A program made the translations under genes and the position numbers. Positions 20,901 through 63,125 of a DNA stretch of 64,000 nt are shown here, piece by piece. Below the pieces are notes generated by a model. The model searched no databases and was not told where the DNA came from. It saw only the letters and a program-made list of their open reading frames with translations. Each line of letters opens with the position of its first letter. Positions within the stretch are counted from its first letter, which is position 1. Origin of the DNA: Macrostomum lignano (taxonomy: Eukaryota); the NCBI GenBank assembly GCA_002269645.1, contig NIVC01000578.1, positions 76,549-140,548 on the forward strand, read 5' to 3'.

Positions 20901-22232
20901 GCCCTGGCTTATACCCTCAGATTTCAGGGTCGCTAATTAGGAAGCTAATGCATCGCTAATTAGGAAGCTCCCTGTGCCCCTGACTTATATCCTCAGACGT
21001 TCACAGACCCTGGAGGTCATGCATCGCACAGAAATCCCCGGGGTCAATTTTCGGACACGAGGCTAAGCCCCAAATTCAGGATCGTGTACTGGCCGTTTTG
21101 AACTGCAGGTTCACCGCTTCACTATGGACATGCGGATGCAGCCGTCTCAGGCTGCTGATGTGCTCAGCCTGCTCAGGTGCGGTCGCCTGGTGATGCCGGA
21201 GGCCTATCGCCGCCTCGACTGCCATGGCGGCTGTCCCGTGAGCTACTCGCAGTACCTGTCAGTCATGCAGTTCCCTCTGGATTCGTCCGACCAGCTGCTG
21301 GAGCTGAGCCCCGCTCTGGCCAGGACTGTCCGGCCTGTCCGAGTCGGAGACAGACAGCTCGCACTGCTGGTATGTTGATACTGACTGTGACACTGGTTGT
21401 AGCACTGGTTGTGGCACTGGTTGTGGCACTGGTTTTGGTACTGGTTTTGGCACTGGTTGTGGCACTAGTTGTGGCACTGGTTGTGGCACTGGTTGTGGCA
21501 CTGGTTGTGGCACTGGTTTTGGCACTGGTTGTGGCACTGACTGTGGCACTGGTTGTGGCACTGGTTGTGGCACTGACTGTGGCACTAATTGTGGCACTGG
21601 TTTTGGCACTGGTTGTGGCACTGGTTGTGGCACTGGTTGTGGCACTAGTTGTGGCACTGACTGTGGCACTGGTTGTGGCACTGGTTTTGGCACTGGTTTT
21701 GGCACTGGTTTTGGCACTGACTGTGGCACTGGTTGTGGCACTGGTTGTTGCACAGTGTTGCACTGTGGTCCATTAACTGTGGTACTTATTGTGGCACTGG
21801 TTGTGGCGCTAATTGTAACTTTCCTCCTGCTGCTAGGAGGGCGAGGTGACGATGGGTCGCAGCGGTCGGCGCCGTCTGGAGCCGCTCTCCGAGGCGGCCA
21901 AGTCGTCCGGCTCCACCGGCGGGGCTGTCGGCTTCGGCAGCGGCAGCGAGCTGAAGCCCCTGCTGGCCGCGGTGGAGAGCTCCCAGACGGCCAAGCCGCT
22001 GCTGACTGGCCAGCTGCGGCCGGAGGAGCTGGTGCGCCAGCTGCGCGCCAGGAACTTCCCCGGCGCCAAGCACGAGCTGGCGGAGGACGGCTCCTGGAGC
22101 ATCTTCCTGGAGGTCGGGCACCAGGAGGCGCTGATCACGGGGTCGGCCGGGGCCACGCATGTCTACTGCGACGACGAGAAAATCCGGCTGGTTGTGCGCG
22201 AGTCGCTGCTGGCCTGTCTGGTGCTGGTTTGA
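14939..22232 (+). CDS. INTS9: Integrator complex subunit 9
   Basis: Exons 15118-15324, 15966-16037, 16129-16268, 16364-16444, 18198-18576, 19057-19281, 19661-19888, 21109-21369, 21837-22232 with consistent phases. Motifs LLLDC, VDAVLISSYH, RIFATEP, SSGFCIGGCNW, GGSALFPC.P.GVLFDLLE, FADICGEWL, FQPLAM, KPLLTGQL. Candidate 9-nt first coding exon ATG CTA ATT|gtaagt at 14939-14947 is less certain. Confidence 0.9.
15477..15850. repeat. (GTA/GCA)n microsatellite in an IntS9 intron
   Basis: Interrupted gtagtagtagca tract. Confidence 0.95.
16617..18180. repeat. 31-bp minisatellite (~50 copies) in an IntS9 intron
   Basis: Unit cagaacccatctgacacagaagagtatctgt; ends ~17 nt before the acceptor at 18197. 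Confidence 0.95.
18611..18988. repeat. 20-bp minisatellite in an IntS9 intron
   Basis: Unit atgactgattggggctgctc, ~18 near-identical copies. Confidence 0.95.
20020..20931 (+). repeat. 43-44-bp minisatellite, family A, in an IntS9 intron
   Basis: Unit cagggtcccagtgccccaatgccctggcttatatcctcagatgt, ~20 copies. Confidence 0.95.
21380..21810. repeat. 12-bp minisatellite in the last IntS9 intron
   Basis: Unit actggttgtggc. Confidence 0.9.
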
Positions 22233-22371
22233 CACTACTGATAGTAGCTTGAATTTGGCGGCGCTAGAAATTAAACAAGTGCATTTGTTAATTTGAAATA
22301 TATTTGTCAGATATGTATTACTGATATGCATTATTGTTTCTTATTTATTGCTTGTAAAGGCAATTATATGT

Positions 22372-23188
22372 TGTCATTAGTGGAAATAGATAAATAAGAC
22401 AGCCACATTGTGCAGTCATCAGTGTACATAGATAGATAAGACAGCGGCATTGTGCAGTCATCAGTGTACATAGATAGAAAAAGACAGCGGCACTGTGCAG
22501 TCATCAGTGTACATAGATAGATAAGACAGCGGCATTGTGCAGTCATCAGTGTACATAGATAGAAAAGACAGCGGCACTGTGCAGTCATCAGTGTACATAG
22601 ATAGATAAGACAGCGGCATTGTGCAGTCATCAGTGTACATAGATAGATAAGACAGCGGCACTGTGCAGTCATCAGTGTACATAGATAGATAAGACAGCGG
22701 CACTGTGCAGTCATCAGTGTACATAGATAGATAAGACAGCGGCATTGTGCAGTCATCAGTGTACATAGATAGATAAGACAGCGGCATTGTGCAGTCATCA
22801 GTGTACATAGATAGAAAAGACAGCGGCACTGTGCAGTCATCAGTGTACATAGATAGAAAAGACAGCGGCACTGTGCAGTCATCAGTGTACATAGATAGAA
22901 AAGACAGCGGCACTGTGCAGTCATCGGTGTACATAGATAGATAAGACAGCGGCACTGTGCAGTCATCAGTGTACATAGATAAATAAGACAGCGGCACTGT
23001 GCAGTCATCAGTGTACATAGATAGAAAAGACAGCGGCACTGTGCAGTCATCAGTGTACATAGATAGAAAAGACAGCGGCACTGTGCAGTCATCAGTGTAC
23101 ATAGATAGATAAGACAGCGGCACTGTGCAGTCATCAGTGTACATAGATAGATAAGACAGCGGCACTGTGCAGTCATCAGTGTACATAC
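22372..23188. repeat. 42-bp minisatellite filling the IntS9-SNX4 gap
   Basis: Unit gtgcagtcatcagtgtacatagatagataagacagcggcact, ~19 copies. Confidence 0.95.
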
Positions 23189-23245
23189 AGGTCTATAGTT
23201 GGGTCAGCATTAATTTTACAAGCCTGGAACTTCCGCAACCGCAGC

Positions 23246-26200
23246 ATGGCTGAGCCGGCAGCTCCCGAAGATCCGCAGCAGCAGCTGCAGACCCAGTCTG
23301 AGCAGCAGCAGCCGGTGCAGTTGTCGCTGCCGAAGCCCAGCGGCCGCTACCTTCGAGTCCGCATCGCTGACCAAGAGCGCTCGCCTGACGACCGAGTCGC
23401 CTACGTGGTGGAGACGCGCGTGCTCGACCAGGAGGCGACGCCGCAGGAGCTGCGCGACCTGCTGGGCAGCCACGCCCTGCAGACGTGCCGCTACTACTCG
23501 GACTTCGATCTGCTGCGCGGCTTCCTGGAGCTGAAATATCCCGACTGCCTGATCCCGCCGCTGCCGGACAAGCTGTCCTCCTACGCGCCCTGGAAGATTG
23601 CCGGACAGAAGTTTGACCAGGTCTGCTGACTCTGCTGTGTTTGCATTCTTGTCCCTAATCCACCTTTCAGAATCTCTGATAATCCGCCTTTGAGAATCTC
23701 CGATAATCCACCTTTGAGACTCCGATAATCCACTTTTGAGAATCTCCGATAATCCACCTTTGAGAATCTCTGATAATCCACCTTTGAGAATCTCTCTGAT
23801 AATACACCTTTGAGATTATTCGCCAGGCTCAAACAGCAGTCCATTCAAGCCAACCCCATCTTCCGTCCCGCAGGACTTCCTCGACAACCGCCGCTTCGGC
23901 CTGGAGCTGTTCATCAACCGGGTGCTGTGCCATCGCCGCCTGAGCTTGTGCCAGCAGGTGGTGTCCTTCCTTCGTCACGACTCTGAATGGCGCCTGCGCG
24001 TCTTCACGCCGGCCATTGGCCAGCAGCTGGACGCCGCAATCTCCGCGCGAAGCGCCGCATTTCGCTTGCGCTCGCCGCTGCCCGCCGTAGCGACGATGCG
24101 GACCAACGCGGCCGCGGTTCGGGCGGCTGTTCAGGTGAACCTGTGGGACATCTGGGGGGCTTATCAGTGAGCTGACTGGCTTATCAGTGAGCTGACTGGC
24201 TTATCAGTGAGCTGACTGGCTTATCAGTGAGCTGACTGGCTTATCAGTGAGCTGACTGGCTTATCAGTGAGCTGACTGGCTTATCAGTGAGCTGACTGGC
24301 TTATCAGTGAGCTGACTGGCTTATCAGTGAGCTGACTGGCTTATCAGTGAGCTGACTGGCTTATCAGTGAGCTGACTGGCTTATCAGTGAGCTGACTGGC
24401 TTATCAGTGAGCTGACTGGCTTATCAGTGAGCTGACTGGCTTATCAGTGAGCTGACTGGCTTATCAGTGAGCTGACTGGCTTATCAGTGAGCTGACTGGC
24501 TTATCAGTGAGCTGACTTAGCCACTTTAAGGTGCTTATCAGTGGAGGATCAGGATCAATCAAGCAGGCTTAGCTCAGAGCCAAAGTCCCCATCCCGCATG
24601 CCCTCAGGCGGTGGCCAAGGCCTACGAGCAGCTGGTGGCCCGGCACTACCGCATTCACCGGCTCCATTCAACCCTCGGCGGCATCCTCAGCGACTGGTGC
24701 GGCCTGGAGGAGGACCCGGCATTTGCTGACGCCCTGCAGACGGCCGGCCACTACATGGACGTCTATGCTAGCGGAGCCGATTCCGCGGTTGGCGAAGACG
24801 ACGAGCTGCTGAATCGGCTGCGCGAGGCCGCCGGCTTCTGCGACTCCGTGGCTGGCCTCTGCCGGCGCCTGGAGCTCAAGGTGAGCTGCTGCTGGTCTTC
24901 TTATTAGCTTTTATGTGGTTGAACTGGCATGGGGATTCCGCCTGAAAAATTGCCCAAGAATCGCCACTCCAAAACCAGATGAGAATTCTCCTGTCCCACC
25001 AGATAAGAATTCCCTTGCCCACCCAGGTGAGAATTCCCCTGCCTACCCAGATAGGAATGTCCCCTGCTAACTCAGGTGAGAATTCCCCTGCCCACCCAGG
25101 TGAGAATTCTCCTGCCAACTCAGGTGAGAATTTCCCTGCCCATCCTGGTGAGAATTCCCCTGCCCATCCTAGTGAGAATTTCCCTGCCCATCCTGGTGAG
25201 AATTTCCCTGCCCATCCTGGTGAGAATTTCCCTGCCCATCCTGGTGAGAATTTCCCTGCCCATCCTGGTGAGAATTTCCCTGCCCATCCTGGTGAGAATT
25301 CCCCTGCCCATCCTGGTGAGAATTCCCCTGCCCATCCTGGTGAGAATTTCCCTGCCCATCCTGGTGAGAATTTCCCTGCCCACCCTGGTAAGAATTCCCC
25401 TGCCCACCCAGGTGAGAATTCCCCTGCCCACCCAGGTGAGAATTCCCCTGCCCACCCAGGTGAGAATTCCCCTGCCCACCCAGGTGAGAATTCCCCTGCC
25501 CACCCAGGTGAGAATTCCCCTGCCAACTCAGGTGATAATTCTCCTGCCAACTCAGGTGAGAATTCCCCTGCCAACTCAAGTGAGAATTCCCCTGCCAACT
25601 CAGGTGAGAATTCTCCTGCCAACTCAGGTGAGAATTCCCCTGCCCATCCTGGTGAGAATTTCCCTGCCCACCCTGGTAAGAATTCCCCTGCCCACCCAGG
25701 TGAGAATCGCCTTCCCCAACTTATAGCACGATGTAAGTGAACAGTGACTTACAATTTAATCTATTTTTAGCACGGGGCTACACGGGTTGTAGCCTAGTGG
25801 TTAGAGCGCCGGAGTCACGACTTGAAGGTCGGGAGTTCGTTTCCTCACCCACTTGTCATGCCGCAGCCTTGTACTCACTTGTTGTTGTTAAATGGGGTGC
25901 CTAGCAGTGCGGGGTGCTCGCTCACTGTACTCACTTATTGTACTCTGCACCCCCCGGCTTACCCCTCCCCTGTTATTCCTTTTATGCCAACGTGGCCGCA
26001 TATGATTGGCTGAGGCCTGAAGGCCCTACTTGGAGGGCCAAGCGTTTTTGCACTGCCAAAATCGATACTGACTCCTGAGTCATTATACCACTTGGAACAA
26101 TTTGAGTCCTTAAGCAAGACACTTGTAACTCTGCATGGCTTCAGTTCACCCAGCTGTAAAATGGGTGCCAGCATTAGCTGGGGTAATTGAGGGTGTGTGG

Positions 26201-26761: not shown

Positions 26762-27154
26762 GAGGGCTGGGGGCTGCTAAGCCTGCTTTAAAGTCTGGGA
26801 GCATCACGACTTTACTAAAATAAGTTTTATGACTTGAAGGGTCCTGTTCGGTCGTGAACTGTTGCAAAATTCTCACCTGTATATTTAGCGCGAGGCACGT
26901 GATTGGCCTTTGCTTGCAGCCCAGATGCTTTAATTGTATAATATTGCAGTGCGATCTTGTTATCTACCAATGTCAAGTAAAAGTTATGCGCGTGGTTTTG
27001 CGCTACAGGCTTTCTGTAATTCAATTTCTGAATGCGTTATGATAATGATTTAAACTTCTCTAAATCAATGTCAGCATTGTGTACGAATTTCTCGAATAAC
27101 CTCATCATTGCATTGTAAATTTATCTGTGTATAATGATCACGTTGTTCAGGTCC

Positions 27155-27727
27155 GCAGTTGCTGGGCCAGCCTCCCAGATCCTCGTTGCTAAGCCAGCCT
27201 CCCAGATCCTCAGTTGCTGGGCCAGCCTCTCAGATCCGCAGTTGCTATGCTAGCCTCCCAGACCCTCAGTTGCTATGCCAGCCTCCCAGATCCTCGTTGC
27301 TAAGCCAGCCTCCCAGATCCTCAGTTGCAGGGGCCAGCCTCCCAGATCCTCAGTTGCAGGGGCCAGCCTCCCAGATCCTCAGTTGCAGGGGCCAGCCTCC
27401 CAGATCCTCAGTTGCAGGGGCCAGCCTCCCAGATCCTCGGTTGCTATGCCAGCCTCTCAGATCCGCAGTTGCTATGCTAGCCTCCCAGATCCTCGTTGCT
27501 AAGCCAGCCTCCCAGAGTGTCAGTTGCTAAGCCAGCCTCCCAGATCCTCAGTTGCAGGGGCCAGCCTCCCAGATCCTCGGTTACTTTGCCAGCCTCCCAG
27601 AGTGTCAGTTGCTGGGCCAGCCTCCCAGATCCTCGGTTACTTTGCCAGCCTCCCAGAGTGTCAGTTGCTAAGCCAGCCTTCCAGATCCTCAGTTGCTGGG
27701 CCAGCCTCCCAGATCCTCAGTTGCTGG
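27155..27727 (+). repeat. 28-29-bp minisatellite, family B, 3' of SNX4
   Basis: Unit gccagcctcccagatcctcagttgc+(3-4 nt); same family at 61224-61487. Confidence 0.9.
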
Positions 27728-28159
27728 GGGCCGTCTGCAGTGCCGGATTGCAGTCGTATTAGTTAAGTCTTCGTTTTCTTGAGTTGTATAAATTTATACG
27801 GCAATTCAAATTCGTACAGATAAATTTATTTTCCGAATTCGGCTACTTCTAATTCGATTCGAAATACACAGACAGATATGACTGCTGGTTCCTCAGTTCA
27901 GAAGTCTGCTCTGGTTCACGGCATTTATCTTTGGGAATTAAAACTTAAGTGCAGGGGATTTTTTCCGATGAGAAAATGCTTACCTTGGATTCTGGCAGTA
28001 CAGTGGCAGCCGTGCGCCTATTGGATGCGATTTTTGTTGCCATGGGAACCTGCCCGGGTAGAAGATGCGCTGATTTTTAACTATGAAAATAGAGTCGTTG
28101 AGCGCTGTTGTCCTGCTCAACTTTTTGATAGCTGTTCCAACCACCTAAGGACCGCCATT

Positions 28160-31020
28160 ATGCCGAGGCTAGCAAGTGAGTTACTAATAGGTTTAGTTTT
28201 TGTAATTCTAAACATGTAGTATAGGTTGTTAAATTTAACTGTACTTAAAAGTCGTGCAACTTACGCACTTTGCTCATGTAAAAAAGAAACTGTTAAGCAA
28301 AACTCTAAAGAACTAATTGTGTTTATTTTGACTCCACCCTCCGGTGAGAATGCGTTATGTGTAAGATAGTGTGTAAGATCTGTTTAAGATGTGTGTGTGT
28401 GTGTGTGTGACACTAAGATGTTGTGTAAGGTAGTGTGTAAGACACATCTGGTGTGTAAGACACTAATATGGTGTGTAAGACACTAAGATGGTGTGTAAGA
28501 CACTAATATGGTGTGTAAGATTGTGTGTAAGACACTAATATGGTGTGTAAGATAGTGTGTAAGACACTAATATGGTGTGTAAGACAGTTTGTAAGATGAC
28601 ACTAAGATGGCGTGTAAGACACTAATATGGTGTGTAAGACACTAATATGGTGTGTAAGATTGTGTGTAAGACACTAATATGGTGTGTAAGATAGTGTGTA
28701 AGACACTAATATGGTGTGTAAGACACTAAGATGGCGTGTAAGACACTAATATGGTGTGTAAGATGGTGTGTAAGACACTAAGATGGTGTGTAAGACACTA
28801 ATATGGTGTGTAAGATTGTGTGTAAGACACTAATATGGTGTGTAAGACAGTTTGTAAGATGACACTAAGATGGCGTGTAAGACACTAATATGGTGTGTAA
28901 GATGGTGTGTAAGACACTAAGATGGTGTGCAAGACACTAAGATGGTGTGTAAGACATTAAGATGGTGTGTAAGACACTAATATGGTGTGTAAGATAGTGT
29001 GTAAGACACTAATATGGTGTGTAAGATAGTGTGTAAGACACTAATATGGTGTGTAAGATAGTGTGTAAGACACTAATATGGTGTGTAAGATAGTGTGTAA
29101 GACACTAATATGGTGTGTAAGACACTAAGATGGCGTGTAAGACACTAATATGGTGTGTAAGATGGTGTGTAAGACACTAAGATGGTGTGTAAGACACTAA
29201 TATGGTGTGTAAGATAGTGTGTAAGACACTAATATGGTGTGTAAGACACTAAGATGGCGTGTAAGACACTAATATGGTGTGTAAGATTGTGTGTAAGACA
29301 CTAATATGGTGTGTAAGACAGTTTGTAAGATGACACTAAGATGGCGTGTAAGACACTAATATGGTGTGTAAGACACTAATATGGTGTGTAAGATTGTGTG
29401 TAAGACACTAATATGGTGTGTAAGATAGTGTGTAAGACACTAATATGGTGTGTAAGACAGTTTGTAAGATGACACTAAGATGGCGTGTAAGACACTAATA
29501 TGGTGTGTAAGATGGTGTGTAAGACACTAAGATGGTGTGCAAGACACTAAGATGGTGTGTAAGACATTAAGATGGTGTGTAAGACACTAATATGGTGTAA
29601 GATTGTGTGTAAGGTAGTGTGTAAGATCTGTTTAAGATGTGTGTGTGTGTGTGTGTGACACTAAGATGTTGTGTAAGGTAGTGTGTAAGACATGGTGTGT
29701 AAGACACTAATATGGTGTGTAAGATTGTGTGTAAGACACATGGTGTGTAAGACACTAATATGGTGTGTAAGATTGTGTGTAAGACACTAAGATGGTGTGT
29801 AAGACACTAAGATGGTGTGTAAGACACTAAGATGGTGTGTAAGACACTAAGATGGTGTGCAAGACACTAAGATGGTGTGTAAGACACTAATATGGTGTGT
29901 AAGACACTAATATGGTGTGTAAGATTGTGTGTAAGACACTAATATGGTGTGTAAGACAGTTTGTAAGATGACACTAAGATGGTGTGCTCGATTGCCGCCG
30001 CAATTCTCAGGATGGTTTCTGCTCGTCTTTCTTCTACTGAACTGCTGGTGGTCTGCCAGCTACGGCTGCCGCTCTCCGTGGCACCGCCTGGAGACGCAAA
30101 GCTGCCTGAGCGGCTCGCTGGCGCTGTGGACGAGACCGTCGGGCTCAGTCCTCGACTGCGTGCTCGAAGCCGAGCGCTCGAGCGGCCTGCAGCTGGCCCA
30201 GTTCGACTCGGACACTCGCCAGTGCTCGCTCTTCCAATACACCGCAGTGTGCCACCTTATCGATGGACTCGCTGCTGCAGAGAGCTTGCAGCCCCGCCGC
30301 TGTGCCGCATTCGCCAATGCCAGAGCCGCCAAGTTCCTCACCTTGAGCAGGAAGCTCATGCTGGGTGTGGGCTCGAAGCTGAGGGCCGCCTGGGTGATGA
30401 GCGACGATGCGGACGCCAGCAGGAGCAACTTGGTGTGCGGCCAGACGCAGCAGTGGATGTCGGAGAATGTGGAGTGGAGCAGCGAGGGAGTCAAGCTCGA
30501 CGGAGCGTCGTCCAAGATGTGGCTGGAGAACGTGGAGTTCGCGAGCGTGCAGCAGGGTCTCACGTGGCTGCTCAGGCTCAAGCGGACTGTCCGAGTGGAG
30601 GCAACGCTGCTCGAATCCTACAACTGCGACTCCCCGGGGGATCGGGGCGCGGCGTTTTGGGACGGCTGGACAGGCGGATGGGGCCTGTACTTCTTCAGGG
30701 TCGCTTCATCTTACTTTGAGTACTTCACACCTTCTGCCACGAACTCGTTTGACCCAAATGAATTCGTTGAGGTCGGCGTCACTTCGGCGTCTCCGTCAAG
30801 CCGCGACTTCTTGTCCAACTCCGGGTTTGTGCCGCGGTCTGCTGTGAACACCGGTACTCAGCGTACCGCTGCCGTGTCGACATACCGCTGCATCCGCTTG
30901 GGATTTCGACCTGGCGACTCGCGAATGCTGAACGGCACAATGCAGGCGGTGGCCGTCATGAACGTCACGATGACGGAGGCTGAGATTAACAGCTTCTTCA
31001 GTCTGGTGCGCTTGCCCTGA
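28160..31020 (+). CDS. Secreted PAN/Apple-like + ConA/LamG-like jelly-roll protein, ~341 aa
   Basis: Exon 1 ATG CCG AGG CTA GCA A|gtgagt (28160-28175) joins in phase to ttctcag|GA TGG (30011-31020), giving signal peptide MPRLARWFLLVFLLLNCWWSASYG. PAN-like DCV...AQFDSDTRQCSLF; LamG3-like GVKLDG...IRLG...LNGTMQAVAVMNVTMTEAEI. Confidence 0.7.
28357..29986. repeat. ~20-bp degenerate satellite (gtgtaagacactaatatggt) in intron 1 of the PAN-LamG gene
   Basis: 1.6-kb array with (GT)n blocks at ~28391 and ~29640 lying in a duplicated variant segment. Confidence 0.95.
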
Positions 31021-36835: not shown

Positions 36836-39800
36836 TCAAGAAGTGTTGGATGACCCGGTTTCCTTTTCCGAACTCGGCGATCCAGCGGCAATGCTATCGA
36901 TTGAGCAAGGCCTCCCATACCAGTCCCGGACTGCATCCAGCAGCCAACCTCGCAGCACAGCCGTCCTATCGATAACCTTTTGAATTCTTTCTTTCAGTCG
37001 TCGTTTCAACTCGACATCATGGCAGTACAGCGCCGCTGTGACCAGCTCCTGGGCGTCTGCGTCCGCTCGCACAGCCACGTCTCTGATCCAGCCATGAGCT
37101 TCCTCGATGCCCACTTTTAGCTCAATTCGGAGACACTGGAGAAGTGCGTCAAAGTTCACAGAAAAATTTGTGTAATAATTCTCCAGTTGAAAAATTACGC
37201 ATTCAGACATCCGTCTGGAAATGAAGGAATACGTTGGGCGCTGATGCAGTGTGAAGCAAAACTTCCAAGCCGAGTCGGAGTTACAGAGATGTTGCCAAAC
37301 TAGCTCCGTCGCCGAGCTCGAGACTGGCTTCTCAGTCGGCCAAGAGAAACCTCGCCTAACTTTGTGCAATCTGCACCCGATGAGAATATCGGCTGCCGCA
37401 TCCTGGAGGCCAAATTTCAGACACGCAAGGACTCTCAGCGATTCGCGAGCGGTTCGAGCGCAATCGGGCAGTTTTCCTATCAAATCCAGGAGTCCCAGAT
37501 GCGATTTGGAGCTGCAGTCGTAGTCAGACAGGAACATTAGCGCTTCGCGAACAACATCGTAGATCTCGTGGTACTCGATTTTATTTGACTTTGGCGATGG
37601 GTTTTGTGCATGCATGTATGGCAGCACAACAAATGGATGAAAGTAGAACATGTCGCCATCGTTGATTGATCGCAGAGTGCTCATAAACTGTATTACTAGC
37701 TCGTCAAAGTTTTCTGTCAAGTGAGTCAGTGCTCTAGCAATGGTTTCAAGAAAAGCCTTCATCTCCTCTGCTGCTTTCGGTTCCACACCCTTCAGGTACA
37801 GAGCCGTGTCGCAGAGAAAGAAATGGTCTAAAATTTTTCCTTCTCCGTTATTATGCCCGGCGTTTTTCTCAACTGAGTCCCGAAGAATCTTGAGCGACTT
37901 CTTTGTGAGGCTGATAAGATTTTCTGGCCGCCATCGCTCGCGTGGTGTTGTCTCAAGCATTCGGAATGTGGTAGTCTTGACGTGGTATGCCTTCAGTCCT
38001 TGAATATTGTAGGAATCTTTGCTGCTGATAACCTTCTTCACCAGATACTTGAGAATGATAAACAGCTGCCCTTGGACAGTGTTTAGACTTCTCAGAAGAA
38101 GCTTCTCCAGAAATGTTGTGCTGACTCGAAGCTGTCTTCCTGCCTGATTTTGAGGTGCTGCGTGCACCACATGGCAGTGTGTAGAGGCGAGCGCCTGTTC
38201 CAGGGACAGAAGCAGGGACTCTGGAACTTCGGAGTCCACGACTCTGTCCGGCAGCAGCGGCGCAATCGGGGGGTAGCAACAGACCCGACGCGCGTCCACT
38301 AGGTCTACGGCGGGCTTCAACACGGATCCCAACAGCGGTTCGGCAGGATTCGATGCTGTGGGATGGATTTAATTTACAGTTGCATCTCGTAGTTGTGAAA
38401 CAGAGTGTAAAAGCTTTAGTATATGGGTTATTAAAGCAAGCCAATTACCGAAACCAGGGCAAAAAATGTGACCATTGGTGTACTCCACTTGTTCGTCTTC
38501 CACCAAATCGCATCGGCATACGCCCCTAATGTGGTAATCTCTTCCAGAGATAAGCCTCATCACATCAATGTCGGACTCAATGTCTGTCGTGCCATCCAGG
38601 GCGGACAGATTGTTGCCCCAGCTTTCGGAATAGCTTCCCACGACAAATACTTCATTGTCACGCAGGCGCCTTCGCAGAATATCCTGCAAAACGTCTGCGA
38701 CCGCGGCTTGAGCTTTGGCTCGAGATTCCGTAAACCCGGACTGCGATAGGCGCCTGTGTAGAAGCATGCTGAGCTCATTTTCTTTTTGCAGCACCCTGAA
38801 ATGCAAAATTTTAACTGCCTATAGTCTCAAAAAATTCAAAACAAGCAAGTAGAATAGTAAAAAAGTACAATGAAAATTAGCTTCTTTTTGTTGTTTCAAA
38901 TCGAAACGACTTTAAATACGTCAAAACTTTAAATCAGTTTTGACGTATTGCAACTGTTTTAAAACAACTTTATGCTAGAGATCTCTTATAGTTAACATTT
39001 AGCCATGCAGGGTAGCTTCAAGCGCTTGTAAGCCAGGTGTCTCATTGTCGCAATACTGGCTAATTTTCAGTTATTATATATCCCACACAGGACTAAAATG
39101 TTCTTACGCTTTTTCATCTGACTTCAAATCGCAGGAGTCCACTTGAGGTTGACTCGTGGGTGAATCTGGCATCCATTTCTCATCCAGTAAGTTGTTTTGT
39201 TGAGCCACCGCCACGGCACCTGAATTAGCGGCTTCTTGGCCACTTTGCTTGTCTTCGACTAATCGCACAGAGAGTAGTACTTCTTGACCCTGCTGAAGAC
39301 TGCTTTCGGCACCGGCTTCCATTAAGGACTTGACCACCCTTTCGTGACCCTGTACAGCTGCAAAAACCAGTGGAGTTATTCCATTGGCCTGGGTCACATC
39401 AACGTCTGCTTGTGCATCGATTAATTCCGTCACCACCTCCGCACTTCCTTGGTACGAAGCCAAATGTAGAGGAGTTAATCCATCGGCTGACTTGATATCG
39501 ACATTGGCTTGAGCTCTAATCAGCTGTTTTGTGACTCTTAACTCATTCACTTGAGCAGTAGCGTGCAAAGCTGACATCCAATTGCCTCCTATCAAGTCCA
39601 CGTCAGCCGGAGCTTTGATGAGTAAATCAACAGCTTTAGTGTGACCTTGATGCGAAGCGATGAACAATGGAGACTCACCGTCGTTTGACATTGTGTCAAT
39701 GTCTGCTTGAGCTTTGATGAGAGAGTCTGCCACTCTGTCGTGCCCGTTTGCACAGGCAATAAACAGTGGCGTTGCGCCACTAGCTGTCTGGGTGTCCACA

Positions 39801-41074
39801 TGGGCTCCTTCCCTTATGAGAAGATTGACAACCTTTAGATGCCCTTGCTGAGCTGCAATAAAAAGAGGCGTAGCGCCCTCCCGTTGCTGAACGTTCAGTT
39901 CAGCCTTAGCATCAACAAGAGCCTGAGCAATTTTGAAATGACCAATTTGGCATGCGACGTACAGTGGTGATTCGTTGTCAACTTGCCTCAAGTTTACATC
40001 TGCTCTCGATTGGATGAGCAGACTCACCACTTCACTATGTCCGCGGTGAGTGGCAGCTAGCATGCAGGAAACTCCAGAGTTGTCTTGGCTGTTAACATTT
40101 GCTTGGGCCTCAACGAGTGCTTTCACAACTCTATGGTGACCCCGAGACGATGCGATATGAAGCGGTGAAGTACCTGTGCACTCTTGAGTATCGAAGTCTG
40201 CTAGCGCTTTTATTAAGACATTCAAAACTTCGTGATGGCCATTTTGTGATGCAACGTAAGACGGCGACATGCCATTGTGCTTGGAAAGATTAACATCAGC
40301 GCTTGCAGCAATCAGAGCCTGTACAACACGGCGATGTCCATTCTGAGATGCGAGATACAGTGGCGAGCAGCCTTTGGCATCTTGAGAGCTCAAATCAATT
40401 TGAGCCGTCAAAAGTAGCTCCACAACTTTCAAGTGACCCTCCTGCGATGCAATATAGAGAGGTGAAATTCCGACAAGATTAGCCACATTTGCGTCCGCTT
40501 CCGCCTTGACGAGCGCCCGGACGACCTCGTGATGCTGGCCGAATGAAGCAGCGTGCAGCGGAGAAACAAGAACTCCCTTATTGATGCAACGGTCGATGTC
40601 AGCTTGAGCTTCGATGAGGAGTTGAACGATTCCAATATGGCCTTCCTGCGACGCGATATACAGCGGTGATGCGCGAATACCTTCAACTTTATTCACATCG
40701 GCTTGAGCTTTGATTAGCAAGTCTGCTAGGAAGTAATAACCATTCTGAGCAGCAAGGTACAGAGGTGTGCATCCGTCTGAGTCCAATAAATCAATGTCAG
40801 CTTGAGCTTCAATCAGTCGTTTTAGAACTTCAAGCCTACCTATACTGCATGTGAGGTGCAAAGGTGAAAACTGCTCGCCTAGAACAGGTAATTCGACGTC
40901 AAGGTTGTTCCGAGCTTCCAGATAGCGGTCCACAACGGTAAGATTGCCTTCCAAGATCGACCGCATGAATTGCTCGTCCGTCGGATAGGGAACATCAGCC
41001 TCGGGTTGGTCAGGCTCAGAGGCAATCATGAAAATAGTGGCTATCCATTTGATCACTTCTTGTATTAGCGACAT
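36836..41074 (-). CDS. Ankyrin-repeat / cGAS-like (Mab-21, cGLR) nucleotidyltransferase fusion, ~1277 aa
   Basis: Exon 1 41074-39108 (16 clear + 1 degenerate ANK repeats) ends AAA GC|gtaaga (phase 2). Exon 2 tttcag|G GTG CTG 38795-38449 carries GSYSE...SDIDVM and ends TTC G|gtaatt (phase 1). Exon 3 ccacag|CA TCG 38355-36836 carries VDLV, RVSTTFLEK, LK, AYHVKT, W..ENL, DHFF. Confidence 0.8.
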
Positions 41075-41777
41075 GGCCGCTTTTTTAGTTCAAACAGAAA
41101 CCAAGCCTTTCAGTAGTTAATTCTATCAGCATAAGCGCGTTTCTCTGACTCTGTTAGTCGTCGCGAGCTATTCTGTTTACAATCTTTTGCGCGTCAAAAG
41201 CAGCTTAGTCCTATTTTTATTGCAGAGTTGAAGCTACAGTGTGTACTGAAGTTTCTACCCCCAAGCATATGCGCGTGATAATGGCCTCATAAATCTGCCT
41301 GGAAATTCGTAGCATCTAGAAAAGAACAGAATTAAATAGACCCGTCGGGCAAGCCTGCTTCAGTTCACTCGCGTACATTCTTGTGCGCAGCCGGGCGCCT
41401 CCATTGGCTACGAGTTTTGATTCTATGCCGGAATTTGCTAGCTCATTACAAATTTGCATGCTACACACGACCGGTAGTACACCACTATAGCAGCCAGCCA
41501 GCATGGAAGCATACAGTGCGATGATCTTTAAACCATAGGCAGACGGATGGCCGTTTTCATCCACTCTGTCTACGTCCAAGCTAGACGGCATAAAATCAAT
41601 CTCTATGGGCCAGATTCGTTAGATTTGTCACCACAGCCGTTCCCGACGACTAGAGGCCGAAAACGGCCATATAGATCTTATTTACAAGGACTACTGACTA
41701 CTATATATGAATCAGATTAAACATGCCTTTTGAGGGATTTATGAAAATAACTCCCGAAGAAGGCATGTTTTATCTCA

Positions 41778-43524: not shown

Positions 43525-45972
43525 TCAAGTCTGAGCGTCCCAGCCCCACTCGGGGTGAATGCGGTAGTGCCCCGGGCTTGCTGGCTGCAGCTCTCGCAGA
43601 CGGGCAGGCGCTGGCGTCGGCGCCGTTGCCTTCGCTGCTCTTGACTCCTGCGGCTTCGTGCCGTGCCAGCTGGTGAACTGCCAGCGGTTTGCCCGGCTGC
43701 CGGGGCTGAGCTGCCTGATGTACTTCAGTGTTGTTGTCGCTGGAGTTGTTTCTGAAGAGTTTCTGAAATAGCATACCAGCACATCTAGAATTATCGTCTC
43801 ACATTCGCGACTTTATACAGTTATAACTACTGAGTAACTATGGAAGCCGAGTCATAGATAATGACTATGGTTTTTATGTGAAAAATACGCACTAAATAAA
43901 TCCCGACGAGCTTTAAATGAATGTGCTTAAGTTTTTTAATTCTTTTTGCGTGATCTGTTTTTTTTGCCTTTCGATTTGACGGCGCAAATTCCTTCTATTT
44001 TAGTTATCTACGTTAACGATTGCAGCAACACACTTAGCACTCACTCTGAAGTTCGTGAAAGCAGCTTCGCGGTTGTCTCACCGCCTGGACGCCGCTCTTC
44101 AGCGCTATCAGCATCGCGCGATCCCTTGGCTTGACTGTCTGGCATCAGCCTGAGCGCTCGCCGCACAACGCTGAGCTCTGCTGGCGAGGCATTTTTGGTC
44201 AGCTGCTGGGCTCGAGCCAGCGCGTGCGAGCTGGCGCTGCTGCCACCTGCCTGTTGAATGAGGGGTTGTCGCGTGGTTCACACCTATGAGGGCTACCTGC
44301 AAACTCACAGACTGTGCATTTCATTCCTGACGATTACAAAGTCAGTGTCTCTGTACACTCTGTGTGAGCGTGTGTATGAGTGCCTGTCTGCGTTCAGTAT
44401 CCGCCCGATTGTATGTGCTCACAAGTCAGTGGAATGTGCAAAACTTTCTCAACCGCTGGTTGTGGGGCGATGTCCCAAGGTTTTCCTCAACATGCAGCTT
44501 CCTCAGAACAATTTCCATCTCCTATTCTTAAACTCTTATCATTAGTTTTAATATCTACTAAAGTCTGCGTTTCCTATACTTGCAATCCAATTACAATCAG
44601 AGACACCCTTGTAACCAGGGACGTCGCCATCGGGGGGGAAAGACATGTCCCCGAGTAAAAGCTATGGGGACATGATAAGGCTTTGTCCCCCCACCCCACC
44701 TTGTGATCTGTGATGGAAATCAATAATTTTGCTTCGGGGTGACAAAACATAGCGCCTGCGGCGCCAAAATGATTGCCTGGGGTGCCAAAATGAGCGCTGA
44801 CAACACCGATTCTGAAAATAATGTACATGTAGGAGTTTGTTGTTAAACGAGGGTGGGAAGCCAGGGGCCCCCGCGGATCAGCCCAAGTAGGGCTCTGCCG
44901 CTGGATCTGTCTGTGGGCGATACTACCAGGGGCATATAAGCCCGAGAGGCCACGGTTGGGACCAGGTCTCAAGGCCTGGTGAGATATTGGGGCTACTAGC
45001 TCAAACCTATGGACTAAGACACCGCTGAACAACAGTGGAATCAGGGACGTTGCTAAGATTGAGTCCACCCAAGCCACCCCCAGCAGACAAGTCCCGGGAG
45101 TCGCGCAAAAAGATTGGAGTTTAGAAGCGGTTCGAGAGCGGGGAGACCACGAAGTCTACGGAAAAGGCTTTAGATTGGAGCGAGTCTGGGCAACTTATTT
45201 ACCAAGGGCGAGTCTCCTAACAGGTAGCCCCCCGTACTAAGCCTCCCATAGGGCTGCGAGCCATACTTGTACATGTAGAATTCTTGGCTTTGTCCTCCAC
45301 ACCAAAAATCCATGGCGACGCCCCTATTTGTAACATCAGAACCTGTTGCATTGTCGGCGACTCCAGCTGACAGGCCACATCATCCGCGAGGACTCACCCT
45401 AATGGAGAGAACCTGGGCGTTTCGTCGACTGCCTACTGGCTGACGCCGGCACCCCTGACTCGTTGTTGGCATTGCGTACGTTCGCGCCCAGGTCCAGAGG
45501 CGAGCCCTGTGACGCTGCTCTCTTTTAGCGCTAACTGACAGTGTATAAATTTTTGTTTGAAGTCTTGCATGTACGATAATGTTGCTTACCGTGGTGCCCG
45601 GTAGTTCTGGAAATCGTTGCGTTGCCAGAGCAACTTTTAATGACGATTTGCCTTCGACTTTGGCAGTTGCCTTTGACTGCGGCTTCTGCTCCGCTTTTTT
45701 GTCAGAATTTTCAGCTAAAAGTTTCCGGGATTATGGTTATTTTGGTCTGTAATGGCCTTATTGAATACGATCTTTGAGTAAACATTGGCTCGCTACTCAG
45801 TTGTAATGTTTTTTTTACCGGCGCGTCTTCCGGCCGTCTCGGGTCCAAAGTTGTTCCGAAATTCCTCCTTCAGCTGTTGCCGACGCGCGTTCGGTACGGG
45901 GGCGTCGAACTCCGGTGGCAGCTGCCATTTCACGAATGCAGCGGCACCTGTTGCGAAGGATTGGCTGGCCAT
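43525..45972 (-). CDS. Unknown small multi-exon protein (ends ...PGHYRIHPEWGWDAQT)
   Basis: Phase-consistent exons 45972-45819 (MASQSF..KWQLPPEFDAP..EEFRNNFG), 45714-45590, 44250-44045 and 43762-43525 with GT-AG ends. Use of sequence at 45510-45343 is ambiguous. No family recognised. Confidence 0.5.
44616..45326. mobile_element. hAT-type MITE, 711 bp
   Basis: TIR cagggacgtcgccat / atggcgacgccccta. 8-bp TSD cttgtaac (44608-44615) / tttgtaac (45327-45334), one mismatch. Confidence 0.75.
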
Positions 45973-48069
45973 TTGTGCAGCTGAGGGGCGCCTGCTGCCG
46001 GTCTGGGTGAGCTGTTTCTTGGGTATTCTACACTCGGCAAGCTTCGTTTTTTCAGCTTATTTAAAATGCATACACTGTAGGGTCTATTGATGATGTACAT
46101 TAATTCAAGTTTTCATTTCGTAGCCATTGGACTGAGAGAACGATGTAGATCTGCCCGCTGCAACTAAAGTTGAAATGAAGTGGTGGTACGCGCATTGAGC
46201 TGCAAGTGTGGGCTTTAGTCTGCAAATATAATGTTTATCAGCTACCCCATTGCTCGGGTTGGCTACTAAAGTCTGAGGGATTGCTGTATTGATTTATGCA
46301 GAACTATTCGCTAGAACTATGCGCATGTAGTAAAGATCGGCAAAATAATAAGCGTAGACCTGCTGTCCTTGTGGAAGTGTTGAGACAATGAGGGTGCATT
46401 TTGGGTGACATATCCATTAAATGGCACCATAAAAGTTTTCTGAAGCGTCATTTCCATCGCACAGGGGTTGTGTCCAATTGCAGTGTTATTTCCCCTAAAT
46501 TACATGTAACAGTATACATATACATGTACACGTACGTAACTGAAAGACGTGTGTACATGTACACGTTAATGAGACTGCAGTTCTGCAATAGTATAATATA
46601 TTCATTGCAATTAGAAGTACAATCCTACTCCTGTAAACAACTAGTAGAGAATGTACATGTACAATGCTACATGTTCATTATTCGCAGGGAATTTTTGATG
46701 CTGGGGCACCGACAATTGAAGTAAGCGTACAATGTCTTACAATAGATTGTTCATGTACTCAGTTGCAATAACAAATAATTGCATTGAAGTGCAATGTACG
46801 GTCATCAGTCACGTATGGTCCAACCCAACTCGGTTGAAGAACAAAGGCGAGATTTGCGCTTCCTCATACTTTGGACTTTGGTGGAAATGACGTAGTGGCA
46901 AATGACAAAGGTCTCTACGGAAATCGAGTTTATTCTGATAATTGTATAAATTTATATTTTAAATGTTAATACAAATTGTATTGTCGACTTCTGGGACCTT
47001 AAAGACTTAATTACTCAGTGAGAAAATCGGTTAAAGCATTTCTTTTAGTCAAAAGAGAAAAGAGAATAGAAAGCGCGCAATCAACTAGACACTAGAGTCC
47101 TCAGTAGCTCTTGGAACTTTTCACTGAAGGTTTGATGACGAACTGTCCTCATTTTGAATACAATTTTGAAAAAGCCATTATGCTATTTTTTATAAAAGGC
47201 TACCATCCCTCCTCTTGTCTTGTACGTCAGACGACCAATCTCTAACCAGCAACCTGGTGTGCTTGCATATTTTGTTATGACACATAAACTTAATATTTTT
47301 TTCCTCTGGACGCGCTCAACTCAAATTGTGCAGTTTCTAACAATGGACTTACCATAACTGAGGTGGGGCGGAGAAAAGAAAATAAATGATTTGAGAATTT
47401 GAAAGTTGGGGTTTCCTCGAAACCGGTTAGCGTTGCGTTCGCACGAATGAAGCCGTAAAAATCGCGCAGACGAATCACAACGAAATTCTTCTCCTGTTTT
47501 ACTCCGACAGCCGGGTTCTTAAGTCCGGTGGGGAGGGTAGTCGTAATCGTAGCGGAGCGGTCGTAGAGCGGCGCGGTCGTTCAAAGCGATGAAACACCGT
47601 AAATTCAGACACCGTAAATTTTGCGTCGATTTGCAGAGCTTGTTACTTGTCAGTAGGGTAGTTGCTGCAACCACCGTAATTTACGTATTACGGAACGTTA
47701 ATGGTCTCAGAGCTTTCTTTGAGATGAGAACTTTGGTTATTTTATGCCCCACGGGCAAATGACTTCAAGAAATACTATGGCTTTAGTCAACGGATAAATA
47801 TGGAGTTATTAATTGTCTTTATTATTAAGTGAAGCAGGCTTATTAAGTAAAATTATTATTATTGTTAATCAAACTAACTTGTAATATTAAATTCCAGACG
47901 AGGATAAATTCACGGGCGCCGGTGCGCAAGACTGTTAGAAGATAGAAGTAAAACTCAAGTTGGTAAATGTAATGACAAAACAAAGAGAGAGAAAGCGCGA
48001 AAGTAAAAACACATACTTGGGACGACTCGTCACAAGCAGAATAAATAGGAAATAAAATAGCATGAACAT

Positions 48070-50482: not shown

Positions 50483-53842
<3,360 letters not shown>

Positions 53843-61903: not shown

Positions 61904-62084
61904 CGCCGCCGTAGAGGGCGCGCGTCACAGGCGCTTCGGTCTGCTGTTTTTTGGCGAAACTCAGAATTTTCCTTTTTCATTTTCTTGGTTCGCATTCGCC
62001 TACTTCAAGTAGGCAAGTTTGGGACTCCAGCGTGTACTGGGGGTAGAATTTGATAAAATGCTGCAGATTGGCTATTAGTTTCAT

Positions 62085-62385
62085 CAGTATTGGCAGATTG
62101 GCTGGCAGTTTTGAGTATTGGCAGATTGGCTGGTAGTTTCATGAGTATTGGCAGATTGGCTGGCAGTTTTGAGTATTGGCAGATTGGCTGGTAGTTTTGA
62201 GTATTGGCAGATTGGCAGGTAGTTTTGAGTATTGGCAGATTGGCAGGTAGTTTTGAGTATTGGCAGATTGGCTAGCAGTTTCATGAGTATTGGCAGATTG
62301 GCTGGCAGTTTTGAGTATTGGCAGATTGGCTGGTAGTTTCATGAGTATTGGCAGATTAGCTGGTAGTTTCATGAATATTGGCAGA
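62085..62385. repeat. 28-30-bp minisatellite
   Basis: Unit gagtattggcagattggctggcagtttt. Confidence 0.9.
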
Positions 62386-62814
62386 GGATCGGCCCGCAAG
62401 CTCAGCTATTTTACCTCGCTGAAACTAAAGGCTCAGGCCGTTTATAATTTATAATTTATAACATTTTTTACATTCGCTCCCTGCGAGCTGGTTGGTGTCC
62501 ACCGCGGGCTCCGCATATTCCATGCTTTTCAGCGTGTGCGGTTAATGTGACTGCCGCTTACTTTTATTGGAGACAAAACCCAATATTGTAACTCACTGCC
62601 CCGCTGCTTCCGCTGCAGCTTCTGCGACTGCAGCTTTTGCTTTGCTTTGCAAATTTCTGCCGTTTTTGTTATTTTTATCTACTGTAGCTTCCGCCATGCG
62701 ATGGTCTGAGGGGTCGAGTGGGAAGATTCTGGCCTGCCAAAATTTCATATTGGAGGCCTCTCAATCATAGTATCGGCGCCTAGTAGTCACGCATTTGTGG
62801 TAGGCTTTGAGGAC

Positions 62815-63125
62815 TACTCAGGGTAGATTTTGAAACTACTTGGGGTAGATTCTGGGACTATTTAGGGTAGATTCTGGGACTACTTGGGGTAGATTCTGGG
62901 ACTATTTAGGGTAGATTCTTGGACTACTTGGGGTAGATTCTGGGACTGCCTAGGGTAGATTCTGGGACTACTTAGGGTAGATTCTGGGACTACTTAGGGT
63001 AGATTCTGGGACTACTTAGGGTAGGTTCTGGGACTGCTTGGGGTAGATTCTGGGACTACTTAGGGTAGATTCTGGGACTACTTAGGGTAGATTCTGGGCC
63101 TGCTTAGGGTAGATTCGGAGACTAC
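62815..63125. repeat. 22-bp minisatellite
   Basis: Unit gggtagattctgggactactta. Confidence 0.9.

What the first reader, a model, noticed from the sequence alone, without database searches (positions are those of the whole stretch)
36836..41074. Hidden ankyrin-array + cGAS-like (cGLR) fusion: candidate innate sensor coupled to nucleotide second-messenger synthesis
Seen: three ORFs listed separately join through two canonical introns with matching phases (39107-38796 phase 2; 38448-38356 phase 1) into one ~1277-aa protein: ~17 ankyrin repeats, linker, Mab-21 domain, helical tail. The nucleotidyltransferase signature looks intact: GS lid (GSYSE), two acidic residues (SDIDVM), third acid (VDLV), and RVSTTFLEK / AYHVKT lysines matching cGAS RLSFSHIEK / SYHVKT. 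Established: cGAS and invertebrate cGLRs are Mab-21-fold enzymes making cyclic dinucleotides that signal through STING. Inference: the ankyrin array is a protein-sensing or autoinhibitory module replacing direct nucleic-acid sensing. Accessory-domain fusions to cGLRs occur in invertebrates, so novelty of this exact architecture must be checked. No STING-like gene lies in this window.
Basis: partly seen in the sequence, partly recalled or inferred. Interest (0 to 1): 0.9.

Follow-up and report, generated by a model that had tools for sequence, protein, structure and literature searches.

The report
Flatworm ankyrin–cGAS-like enzyme gene
This is a real three-exon gene of the flatworm Macrostomum lignano that joins about 16 ankyrin repeats to a cGAS-like enzyme domain, but it is one of hundreds of such genes in this genome, and the family has already been catalogued and partly screened in the 2023 census of cGAS-like receptors.

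Summary
On the minus strand, three ORFs join through two canonical introns (39107-38796, phase 2; 38448-38356, phase 1) into a stop-free 1277-aa protein. A deposited UniProt model uses the same two junctions, and a paralogue whose model comes from transcripts has both introns in the same phases.

The N-terminal half has 16 Pfam ankyrin repeats. The C-terminal half folds confidently (pLDDT 81) and its best structural matches are human cGAS, then a coral cGLR and MAB21L1. The Gly-Ser, Asp-Ile-Asp and third-Asp motifs are invariant in 27 of 27 paralogous domains.

It is not a new architecture:
- The window is from Macrostomum lignano, which has at least 150 Mab-21-type loci.
- Li et al. 2023 list ANK-cGLR fusions and record Ank domains in M. 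lignano cGLRs.
- They cloned five M. lignano members (30-37% identical to this one); none is among their 15 active enzymes.

Enzymatic activity and a sensor role therefore remain inferred. Three points are still of interest:
- Two probes found no STING in this genome.
- A conserved ~265-aa C-terminal domain has no structural relative.
- The enzyme core is not basic, unlike the nucleic-acid-sensing cGLRs.

Verdict: a new member of a known kind, of moderate to low interest.

The parts
41015..41074 (-). Start codon (ATG 41074-41072) and a short N-terminal hydrophobic helix (MSLIQEVIKWIATIFMIASE).
   Evidence: Read and translated. Similar 'M..hydrophobic..[FL]MQA' N-termini open several paralogue models that begin with Met. 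This favours ATG 41074 over the 5' extension in P0001.
39275..40969 (-). Ankyrin-repeat array: 16 Pfam repeats plus an N-terminal capping repeat (residues ~36-600).
   Evidence: Pfam Ank E 4.8e-100 with 16 stretches, and Ank_2 E 4.2e-126. The region before the enzyme module ranges from ~270 to ~860 aa among paralogues.
39108..39274 (-). Acidic, low-complexity linker at the end of exon 1 (residues ~601-656).
   Evidence: Translation; pI 4.9 for residues 601-690.
38796..39107 (-). Intron 1: 312 nt, GTAAG...TTTCAG, phase 2.
   Evidence: Read. P0001 uses the same junction. P0005 has a phase-2 intron at the equivalent place.
38449..38795 (-). Exon 2: N-terminal spine helices and the first part of the nucleotidyltransferase N-lobe. 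It carries Gly709-Ser710 (38638-38633) and Asp731-Ile-Asp733 (38572-38564).
   Evidence: Sequence read. GS and DID are invariant in 27/27 paralogous domains. In the AF2 model GS follows strand 49-52 and DxD opens strand 77-81.
38356..38448 (-). Intron 2: 93 nt, GTAAT...CCACAG, phase 1, with one in-frame TAA.
   Evidence: Read. P0001 has the same junction, and the transcript-derived P0005 has the identical 'GF|AS' junction.
37715..38355 (-). Rest of the Mab-21/cGAS-like core: the third catalytic Asp789 (38305-38303, 'VDLV'), RVSTTFLEK, AYHVKT and the Mab-21_C helical lobe (residues ~772-985).
   Evidence: PDB phmmer hit to cGLR1 8gjw, E 3.6e-5, spanning VDLV to the C-lobe. hhalign against cGAS references gives 96% probability over C-half residues 170-303. 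Foldseek finds human cGAS with prob 1.00 and TMt 0.56. D133 (C-half numbering) is invariant in 27/27.
36914..37714 (-). Conserved family-specific C-terminal alpha/beta domain (residues ~986-1252) of unknown function.
   Evidence: It is conserved together with the core in all full-length relatives. AF2 gives pLDDT ~80 overall and 85-98 over most blocks. There is no significant structural match in the PDB (best E 0.4) or the viral library (best E 1.4), and no Pfam hit.
36836..36913 (-). Disordered, non-conserved C-terminal end and the TGA stop (36838-36836).
   Evidence: pLDDT below 50 for C-half residues 597-621. Column conservation is 0.04-0.22. The stop was read.

Best explanation
Shown:
- The locus is one three-exon gene of Macrostomum lignano encoding a 1277-aa cytosolic protein.
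- Its parts, in order, are a short hydrophobic N-terminal helix, about 16 ankyrin repeats, an acidic linker, a Mab-21/cGAS-fold nucleotidyltransferase core and a lineage-specific ~265-aa C-terminal domain.
- The core keeps the full Gly-Ser / Asp-x-Asp / Asp metal-binding signature.
- It belongs to a very large, deeply diverged family found only in M. lignano. The enzyme-plus-tail module stays constant while the ankyrin array varies in length.

Inferred:
- The core is an active nucleotidyltransferase that makes a nucleotide-based signal, most likely a cyclic di- or oligonucleotide, as cGLRs do.
- The variable ankyrin array is the ligand- or partner-binding part that controls the enzyme, probably by recognising a protein or other non-nucleic-acid cue, because the core is not basic.
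- Because no STING was detected, whatever reads the product would be a different receptor.
For: Gene structure:
- Canonical, phase-matched introns give a stop-free 1277-aa product.
- The same junctions appear in deposited model P0001.
- The same intron phases appear in paralogue P0005, whose BOX15 model comes from RNA-seq transcripts (PMC5730564).

Domains and fold:
- Ank E 4.8e-100.
- AF2 model of the C-half: pLDDT 81, pTM 0.83.
- Foldseek's top 19 hits are all cGAS with prob 1.00, followed by Sp-cGLR1, MAB21L1, MiD51 and bacterial CdnE.
- The C-lobe profile aligns to cGAS at 96% probability.

Active site:
- G53/S54, D75/D77 and D133 (C-half numbering) are invariant in 27/27 domains, although most paralogues are only ~45-55% identical to this one.
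- Their strand positions fit the pol-beta NTase layout.

Family and published context:
- At least 70 scored loci with open frames, from 1094 candidates.
- At least 150 Mab-21_C matches over the cut-off.
- The pre-enzyme region varies from 272 to 864 aa.
- Li et al. [quoted passage not shown]
- The core pI is 6.8 (family median 7.7), against >8.5 reported for dsDNA/dsRNA-sensing cGLRs.
- The nearest relatives outside Macrostomum pass both Pfam Mab-21 models.
Against: - No biochemical evidence exists for this protein.
- The five M. lignano relatives screened by Li et al. (NTase constructs, pooled nucleic-acid ligands) are not among the 15 annotated active enzymes. Insolubility, a missing ligand or the missing ANK array could equally explain that.
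- The N-lobe carrying GS and DxD does not align to cGAS by sequence profile (prob <1%).
- This protein scores below Pfam's Mab-21_C threshold and none of 21 members hits PF03281.
- No STING was detected, so the canonical downstream pathway appears to be missing.
- Mab-21-fold proteins such as MAB21L1 and MiD51 are not known to be catalytic.
- There are no junction-spanning reads for this exact locus.
Confidence: 0.55

Rival explanations
1. The Mab-21 core is a non-catalytic scaffold or nucleotide-binding module, like MAB21L1 or MiD51. On this view the protein works through protein-protein interactions of its ankyrin array and C-terminal domain, for example in signalling or cell-death complexes, and makes no second messenger.
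For: - MAB21L1 (5eom) and MiD51 (4oag, 5wp9) are among the structural matches.
- Five relatives were screened and none is listed as active.
- No STING was found.
- The N-lobe is strongly diverged from cGAS.
- Some family members are fused to caspase or death domains.
Against: - The Gly-Ser, Asp-x-Asp and third Asp positions are invariant in 27/27 domains that are otherwise about half identical. That pattern is hard to explain without catalysis.
- Li et al. state that the inactive Mab21L1/2/3 group lacks a predicted functional active site.
- cGAS chains outrank MAB21L1 and MiD51 in the fold search.
Confidence: 0.25
2. The enzyme is active but has a different chemistry or logic from cGLR-STING. 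It might make linear 2'-5' oligonucleotides as OAS does, or nucleotidylate a target. The ankyrin array could even act as the receptor for the nucleotide product, as the ankyrin domain of RNase L binds 2-5A (that comparison is from my own knowledge).
For: - The NTase triad is intact.
- No STING was detected.
- The core is near neutral.
- The loop between GS and DxD is long and modelled with low confidence (C-half residues 63-74), unlike the shorter spacing in cGAS.
Against: - No specific similarity to OAS or RNase L was found. The structural matches are cGAS, cGLR and Mab-21.
- The idea is speculative and was not testable here.
Confidence: 0.12
3. The ankyrin ORF and the Mab-21 ORFs are expressed as two separate mRNAs, for example by spliced-leader trans-splicing at the intron-1 acceptor of a polycistronic precursor. 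The fusion would then be an artefact of the gene model.
For: - M. lignano has widespread SL trans-splicing, and ~7% of transcriptional units encode several genes.
- Exon 1 reads straight into a TAA after the donor site, and an in-frame Met lies 10 codons into exon 2.
- There are no locus-specific junction reads.
Against: - Many transcript-derived BOX15 models carry ANK and the Mab-21 module in one ORF.
- P0005 has the same three-exon layout and phases.
- Reading frames match across both introns.
- Li et al.'s domain table records Ank_2 inside the same accessions as the cGLR domain.
Confidence: 0.07

Closest known systems
M. lignano ANK-cGLRs in the Li et al. 2023 census (PAA86972.1, PAA45980.1, PAA57558.1, PAA93208.1, PAA68676.1; PMC9980059 Tables S2, S3)
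   Same: - Same species and same family: BLASTP E 1e-43 to 2e-70, 30-37% identity over ~300-425 residues.
- Same GS / D-x-D / D motifs, and the constructs run on into the same C-terminal tail.
- Ank_2 domains are recorded for three of these five accessions and for other M. lignano cGLRs; the stored table is truncated.
   Different: - The window's gene belongs to a different, unscreened subclade; its closest paralogues are ~50% identical.
- Its array is longer (16 repeats).
- Li et al. tested truncated constructs without the ankyrin array and report no activity for them.
[quoted passage not shown] 2023, Fig. 4C)
   Same: A cGLR nucleotidyltransferase core fused to ankyrin repeats, interpreted as protein- or ligand-interaction modules.
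   Different: - A cnidarian with 42 cGLRs and 7 STINGs, whereas no STING was detected in this flatworm genome.
- I found the C-terminal tail domain only in M. lignano.
Human/mouse cGAS (e.g. PDB 6ct9, 4o69)
   Same: - Best structural match: prob 1.00, TMt 0.55-0.57 over ~400 columns.
- The C-lobe motifs RxS..xEK and YHxKT align.
- The GS, acidic pair and third acidic residue are in the expected strand positions.
   Different: - Only 13-16% identity, and the N-lobe cannot be aligned by sequence.
- No basic N-terminal tail, and the core is near neutral (pI 6.8).
- Extra ankyrin array and ~265-aa tail.
- A longer loop between GS and DxD.
MAB21L1 / MiD51 (non-immune Mab-21-fold proteins)
   Same: Same fold, found at lower rank in the structure search.
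   Different: - The Mab21L group lacks a predicted functional active site (Li et al.), whereas this family keeps the triad invariant.
- The genome's likely Mab21L orthologues are separate loci scoring 102 bits on Mab-21_C (C401, C402, C835).

Membership tests
cGAS-like receptor (cGLR), Mab-21 superfamily CD-NTase | cGAS/Mab-21 bilobed nucleotidyltransferase fold | tested here: met
   AF2 model pLDDT 81, pTM 0.83. Foldseek against the PDB: human cGAS E 2e-5, prob 1.00, TMt 0.56, then Sp-cGLR1, MAB21L1, MiD51 and CdnE.
cGAS-like receptor (cGLR), Mab-21 superfamily CD-NTase | Complete active site: G-S, [DE]-h-[DE] and a third [DE] on neighbouring strands | tested here: met
   G709-S710, D731-I-D733 and D789 are present and invariant in 27/27 paralogous domains. 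GS follows strand 1, DxD opens strand 2 and D789 lies in a later strand. D789 aligns to the VDLV strand of cGLR1 8gjw. Caveat: GS and DxD were placed by topology, not by a significant sequence alignment, and I could not superimpose coordinates.
cGAS-like receptor (cGLR), Mab-21 superfamily CD-NTase | Match to Pfam Mab-21 (PF03281) and/or Mab-21_C (PF20266) above the curated threshold | tested here: not met
   This protein scores 21.0 bits on Mab-21_C against a cut-off of 24.1 and has no PF03281 hit. 19 of 21 family members hit Mab-21_C at E<=0.1 (best 2.4e-6) and none hits PF03281. Homology is nevertheless supported by profile-profile alignment and by the fold search.
cGAS-like receptor (cGLR), Mab-21 superfamily CD-NTase | Ligand-stimulated synthesis of a nucleotide second messenger | not testable with these tools
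   Li et al. screened five relatives as NTase constructs. None carries an 'active' note in Table S3.
cGLR-STING pathway | A STING receptor encoded in the same genome | tested here: not met
   The PF15009 six-frame search of G000 gave 0 candidates. The human STING ligand-binding domain as a query gave a best E of 2.1, in a frame with stops. The same kind of search found at least 150 Mab-21_C loci, so the method does work on this genome. Absence is not proven, because a diverged or unassembled STING could be missed.
Ankyrin-repeat proteins | Tandem 33-residue ankyrin repeats | tested here: met
   PF00023 E 4.8e-100 with 16 stretches; PF12796 E 4.2e-126.
Mab21L1/2 developmental orthologue | A ~360-aa stand-alone, highly conserved Mab-21 protein without a complete active site | tested here: not met
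   This protein has 1277 aa, extra domains and an intact triad. The strongest Mab-21_C loci in the genome (102 bits, ~410-aa frames) lie elsewhere.

The most novel reading that the evidence does not exclude
Macrostomum lignano has a radiation of hundreds of catalytically competent ANK-cGLRs that signal without STING. In this reading the variable ankyrin arrays act as a diversified recognition repertoire for proteins or other non-nucleic-acid cues. The nucleotide product would be read by an unknown receptor, possibly the orphan C-terminal domain, or effector domains such as the caspase or death domains fused in some members. This would be a cGLR immune system wired differently from any described. 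It would also contradict the published view that cGAS and STING are either both kept or both lost (Wu et al. 2014).
Probability: 0.3. Interest if true: 0.7.

Novelty: new member of a known kind. Interest (0 to 1): 0.35.

Why it matters
As a single gene it adds little, because ANK-cGLR fusions, including those of M. lignano, are already in the 2023 cGLR census. The wider context is more useful:
- Flatworms are usually described as having lost cGAS and STING together, yet this early-branching flatworm carries hundreds of cGLR-type genes with an invariant active site and no detectable STING.
- Each gene couples a variable ankyrin array to a constant enzyme-plus-orphan-domain module.
- M. lignano has a published transgenesis method (PMC5730564), so it could be used to ask what a cGLR does when STING is absent and whether ankyrin arrays can serve as cGLR ligand sensors.

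Tried and rejected
- **N-lobe alignment:** profile-profile alignment of the N-lobe to cGAS, local and global, was not significant and was mis-registered: it put the query's DID on the third-Asp strand of cGAS. I did not use it.
- **Exact-sequence look-ups:** neither the 1277-aa product nor P0005 was on record among encoding contigs. I mapped P0005 onto genomic DNA instead.
- **PADLOC defence models:** no hit for the C-terminal half.
- **C-terminal tail:** no significant fold match in the PDB or the viral library. The best PDB hit was the TRIF N-terminal domain (E 0.4, prob 0.35), which I do not accept as a match.
- **P0001's 1509-aa model:** its extra ~250 N-terminal residues map to 46041-43526 at only 73-100% identity and splice into an internal acceptor near 41015. 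Paralogue N-termini favour ATG 41074, so I treat the extension as a probable merged model.
- **Neighbouring long ORFs:** those at 19.9-23.8 kb, 24.9-25.7 kb and 59.4-60.6 kb fall in minisatellite arrays and have no credible Pfam domains. I found no functional partner gene in the window.
- **Poly(A) signal:** no canonical AATAAA within ~500 nt downstream of the stop. I did not pursue this.
Full report
**Observation.**
- A stop-to-stop ORF list shows three minus-strand ORFs at 39104-41089, 38369-38818 and 36836-38368.
- Intron 1 (39107-38796) runs from GTAAG to TTTCAG and is phase 2. Intron 2 (38448-38356, 93 nt) runs from GTAAT to CCACAG and is phase 1.
- Joining the three exons from the ATG at 41074 gives 3834 nt, which encodes 1277 aa plus a TGA stop with no internal stop.
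- Intron 2 is a multiple of three with one in-frame TAA, so ORFs 2 and 3 share a genomic frame.

**Organism and independent gene models.**
- A search of the protein collection identified the source as Macrostomum lignano.
- P0001 differs at the 5' end. About 250 extra residues map to 46041-43526 at only 73-100% identity and splice into an acceptor near 41015.
- Several paralogue models that begin with Met open with the same kind of short hydrophobic helix as the window's MSLIQEVIKWIATIFMIA.
- The GenBank 'BOX15_Mlig' models of the paralogues were built entirely from RNA-seq transcripts with StringTie/TACO, TBONE and TransDecoder (PMC5730564). Many of them carry the ankyrin array and the Mab-21 module in one ORF.
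- I mapped one of these, P0005, onto its own locus (C2078). It has three exons, a phase-2 intron just upstream of the 'ELS..LH' helix, and a phase-1 intron at the identical 'GF|AS' junction with the same GGTAATT donor.
- No junction reads could be obtained for this exact locus. The fusion is therefore well supported, but indirectly.

**Domains.**
- The N-terminal half has 16 Pfam ankyrin repeats (E 4.8e-100).
- The C-terminal half gives only a sub-threshold Mab-21_C hit (21.0 against 24.1 bits) and no PF03281 hit. Of 21 family members, 19 reach Mab-21_C at E<=0.1 and none reaches PF03281.
- A sequence search of PDB chains finds cGLR1 (8gjw) at E 3.6e-5. The alignment starts at 'VDLV', which matches the strand carrying that enzyme's third acidic residue.
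- A profile of 27 paralogous domains aligns to cGAS and cGLR reference sequences at 96% probability over the C-lobe. It pairs RVSTTFLEK with RLSFSHTEK and AYHVKT with SYHVKT.
- The N-lobe does not align by sequence (probability <1%).

**Structure.**
- An AlphaFold2 model of the 621-aa C-terminal half, built on 21 family sequences, has pLDDT 81 and pTM 0.83.
- Foldseek against the PDB returns human cGAS chains as the top 19 hits (E from 2e-5, prob 1.00, TMt ~0.55 over ~400 columns). Sp-cGLR1, MAB21L1, MiD51 and bacterial CdnE follow.
- In the model, Gly-Ser follows the first strand (49-52), Asp-Ile-Asp opens the second strand (77-81), and the third Asp sits in strand 132-135. This is the pol-beta nucleotidyltransferase layout.
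- The loop between GS and DxD is longer than in cGAS and is modelled with low confidence.

**Conservation.**
- Across 27 paralogous domains, most of them ~45-55% identical to this one, G53, S54, D75, D77 and D133 (C-half numbering; full-length 709, 710, 731, 733, 789) are invariant. So are R192, S194, E199, Y239, H240 and K242.
- This is the strongest argument here for a working active site, because the non-immune Mab21L group lacks a predicted functional active site.

**C-terminal tail.**
- Residues ~986-1252 are conserved together with the core in every full-length relative.
- Modelled alone, the tail folds into a confident alpha/beta domain (pLDDT 85-98 over most blocks).
- It has no significant match in the PDB (best E 0.4) or the viral structure library (best E 1.4), and no Pfam family.

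**Family size and distribution.**
- The enzyme-plus-tail module hits at least 70 scored loci with open frames, out of 1094 first-look candidates.
- The window's gene has two near-identical copies elsewhere (C2174 and C2435, 99-100%). This fits the assembly's known redundancy.
- In an exhaustive search of 1.84 billion representative proteins, 206 scored E<=0.001. The five distant full-length relatives whose source I looked up, down to 28% identity, are all from M. lignano.
- Outside the species only the core (residues ~115-280) matches. Those hits are ~650-1000-aa proteins that pass both Pfam Mab-21 models, including one from the bivalve Mercenaria.
- The region before the enzyme module ranges from ~270 to ~860 aa among paralogues. 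The pattern is therefore a variable repeat array joined to a constant enzyme module.

**What is already known.**
- Li et al. [quoted passage not shown] They report that 87% are stand-alone, with ankyrin- and TPR-fused forms as minor architectures.
- They state that 'most platyhelminthes' have only Mab21-like proteins.
- Their Table S2 lists Ank_2 domains in M. lignano cGLR accessions.
- Their Table S3 shows five M. lignano proteins (entries 89-93) cloned for the 140-enzyme screen. These are clearly the same family as the window's protein: 30-37% identity, E 1e-43 to 2e-70, same motifs.
They were therefore not among the 15 active enzymes. The constructs begin just before the enzyme core and so lack the ankyrin array, and they were tested with pooled nucleic-acid ligands.
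- The architecture, and this species' family, are thus already catalogued but uncharacterised.

**STING and charge.**
- A six-frame search of the whole genome with Pfam STING_LBD gave no candidates. The human STING ligand-binding domain, recalled from memory and so approximate, gave only noise (E 2.1 in a frame with stops).
- The same kind of search readily found Mab-21_C, so the method works on this genome. Absence is still not proven.
- Published work says cGAS and STING were lost together in flatworms, based on Schistosoma (PMC4117786). Planarians lack both (PMC13563047).
- The enzyme core has pI 6.8 (family median 7.7) and the whole protein 5.6. Li et al. report pI >8.5 for dsDNA/dsRNA-sensing cGLRs and suggest non-nucleic-acid ligands for acidic ones.

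**Interpretation.**
- The gene structure, architecture, fold, invariant triad and lineage-specific expansion are shown.
- It is inferred that the enzyme is active, that it makes a cyclic nucleotide signal, that the ankyrin array senses or gates, and that the role is immune.
- I put about 0.55 on that mechanistic reading. The main rival is a non-catalytic scaffold (0.25). Smaller weights go to a different chemistry (0.12) and to two separate transcripts (0.07).
- Some distant family members are fused to a caspase domain (P0097) or a death domain (P0032). If those models are real, they hint at cell-death or immune wiring.

**Verdict.** The gene is a new, unscreened member of a known and already catalogued kind. 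The most interesting open reading is that this large cGLR radiation works without STING.

Noticed in passing
Not in the window: P0097 (PAA93319.1, BOX15_Mlig026614g1) and P0032: A distant family member of 2111 aa combines ankyrin repeats, the Mab-21-like module, more ankyrin repeats and a C-terminal caspase (Peptidase_C14) domain. Another, of 1960 aa, carries a death domain. These could be real effector fusions or merged gene models.
   Followed up: partly
window 41015-41074 (-): The protein starts with a short hydrophobic helix (VIKWIATIFMIA). Several paralogue N-termini share it ('..[FL]MQA' or 'FLEWLLNFVGAFCMPVF', some with Cys pairs). It may be a membrane-association or lipidation element.
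   Followed up: no
window 43526-46041 (-): Low-complexity coding-like segments match the extra N-terminus of deposited model P0001 at 73-100% identity. They may be an upstream gene of the same transcriptional unit, or exons wrongly merged in that model.
   Followed up: partly
window 4276-4855, 16613-18181, 18610-25707, 27148-29986, 56920-63997: The gene sits in DNA packed with minisatellite arrays (periods 20-50 nt, up to 50 or more copies). The long 'ORFs' at 19.9-23.8 kb, 24.9-25.7 kb and 59.4-60.6 kb are repeat artefacts without credible Pfam domains.
   Followed up: yes
window 52570-53738: A ~1.2-kb GA-rich low-complexity tract explains the extreme GC and AT skew of the 52-54 kb bin.
   Followed up: yes
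window 12608-13243 (-): A remnant of a DDE (mariner/Tc1-like) transposase ORF: DDE_3 E 1.8e-5 and Transposase_1 E 8.3e-5, both below the curated cut-offs.
   Followed up: no
G000:C578:543746-546532 (+), outside the window: A second paralogous ANK plus Mab-21 locus lies on the same contig about 430 kb away. Several other contigs (C2028, C558, C1673, C877) carry clusters of two to four copies, which suggests tandem duplication.
   Followed up: no
P0155 (Mercenaria mercenaria XP_053407825.1): One of the nearest relatives outside the flatworm is a bivalve Mab-21 protein fused to a trypsin-like peptidase domain. This is another example of an accessory-domain fusion in invertebrate cGLR-like proteins.
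   Followed up: no
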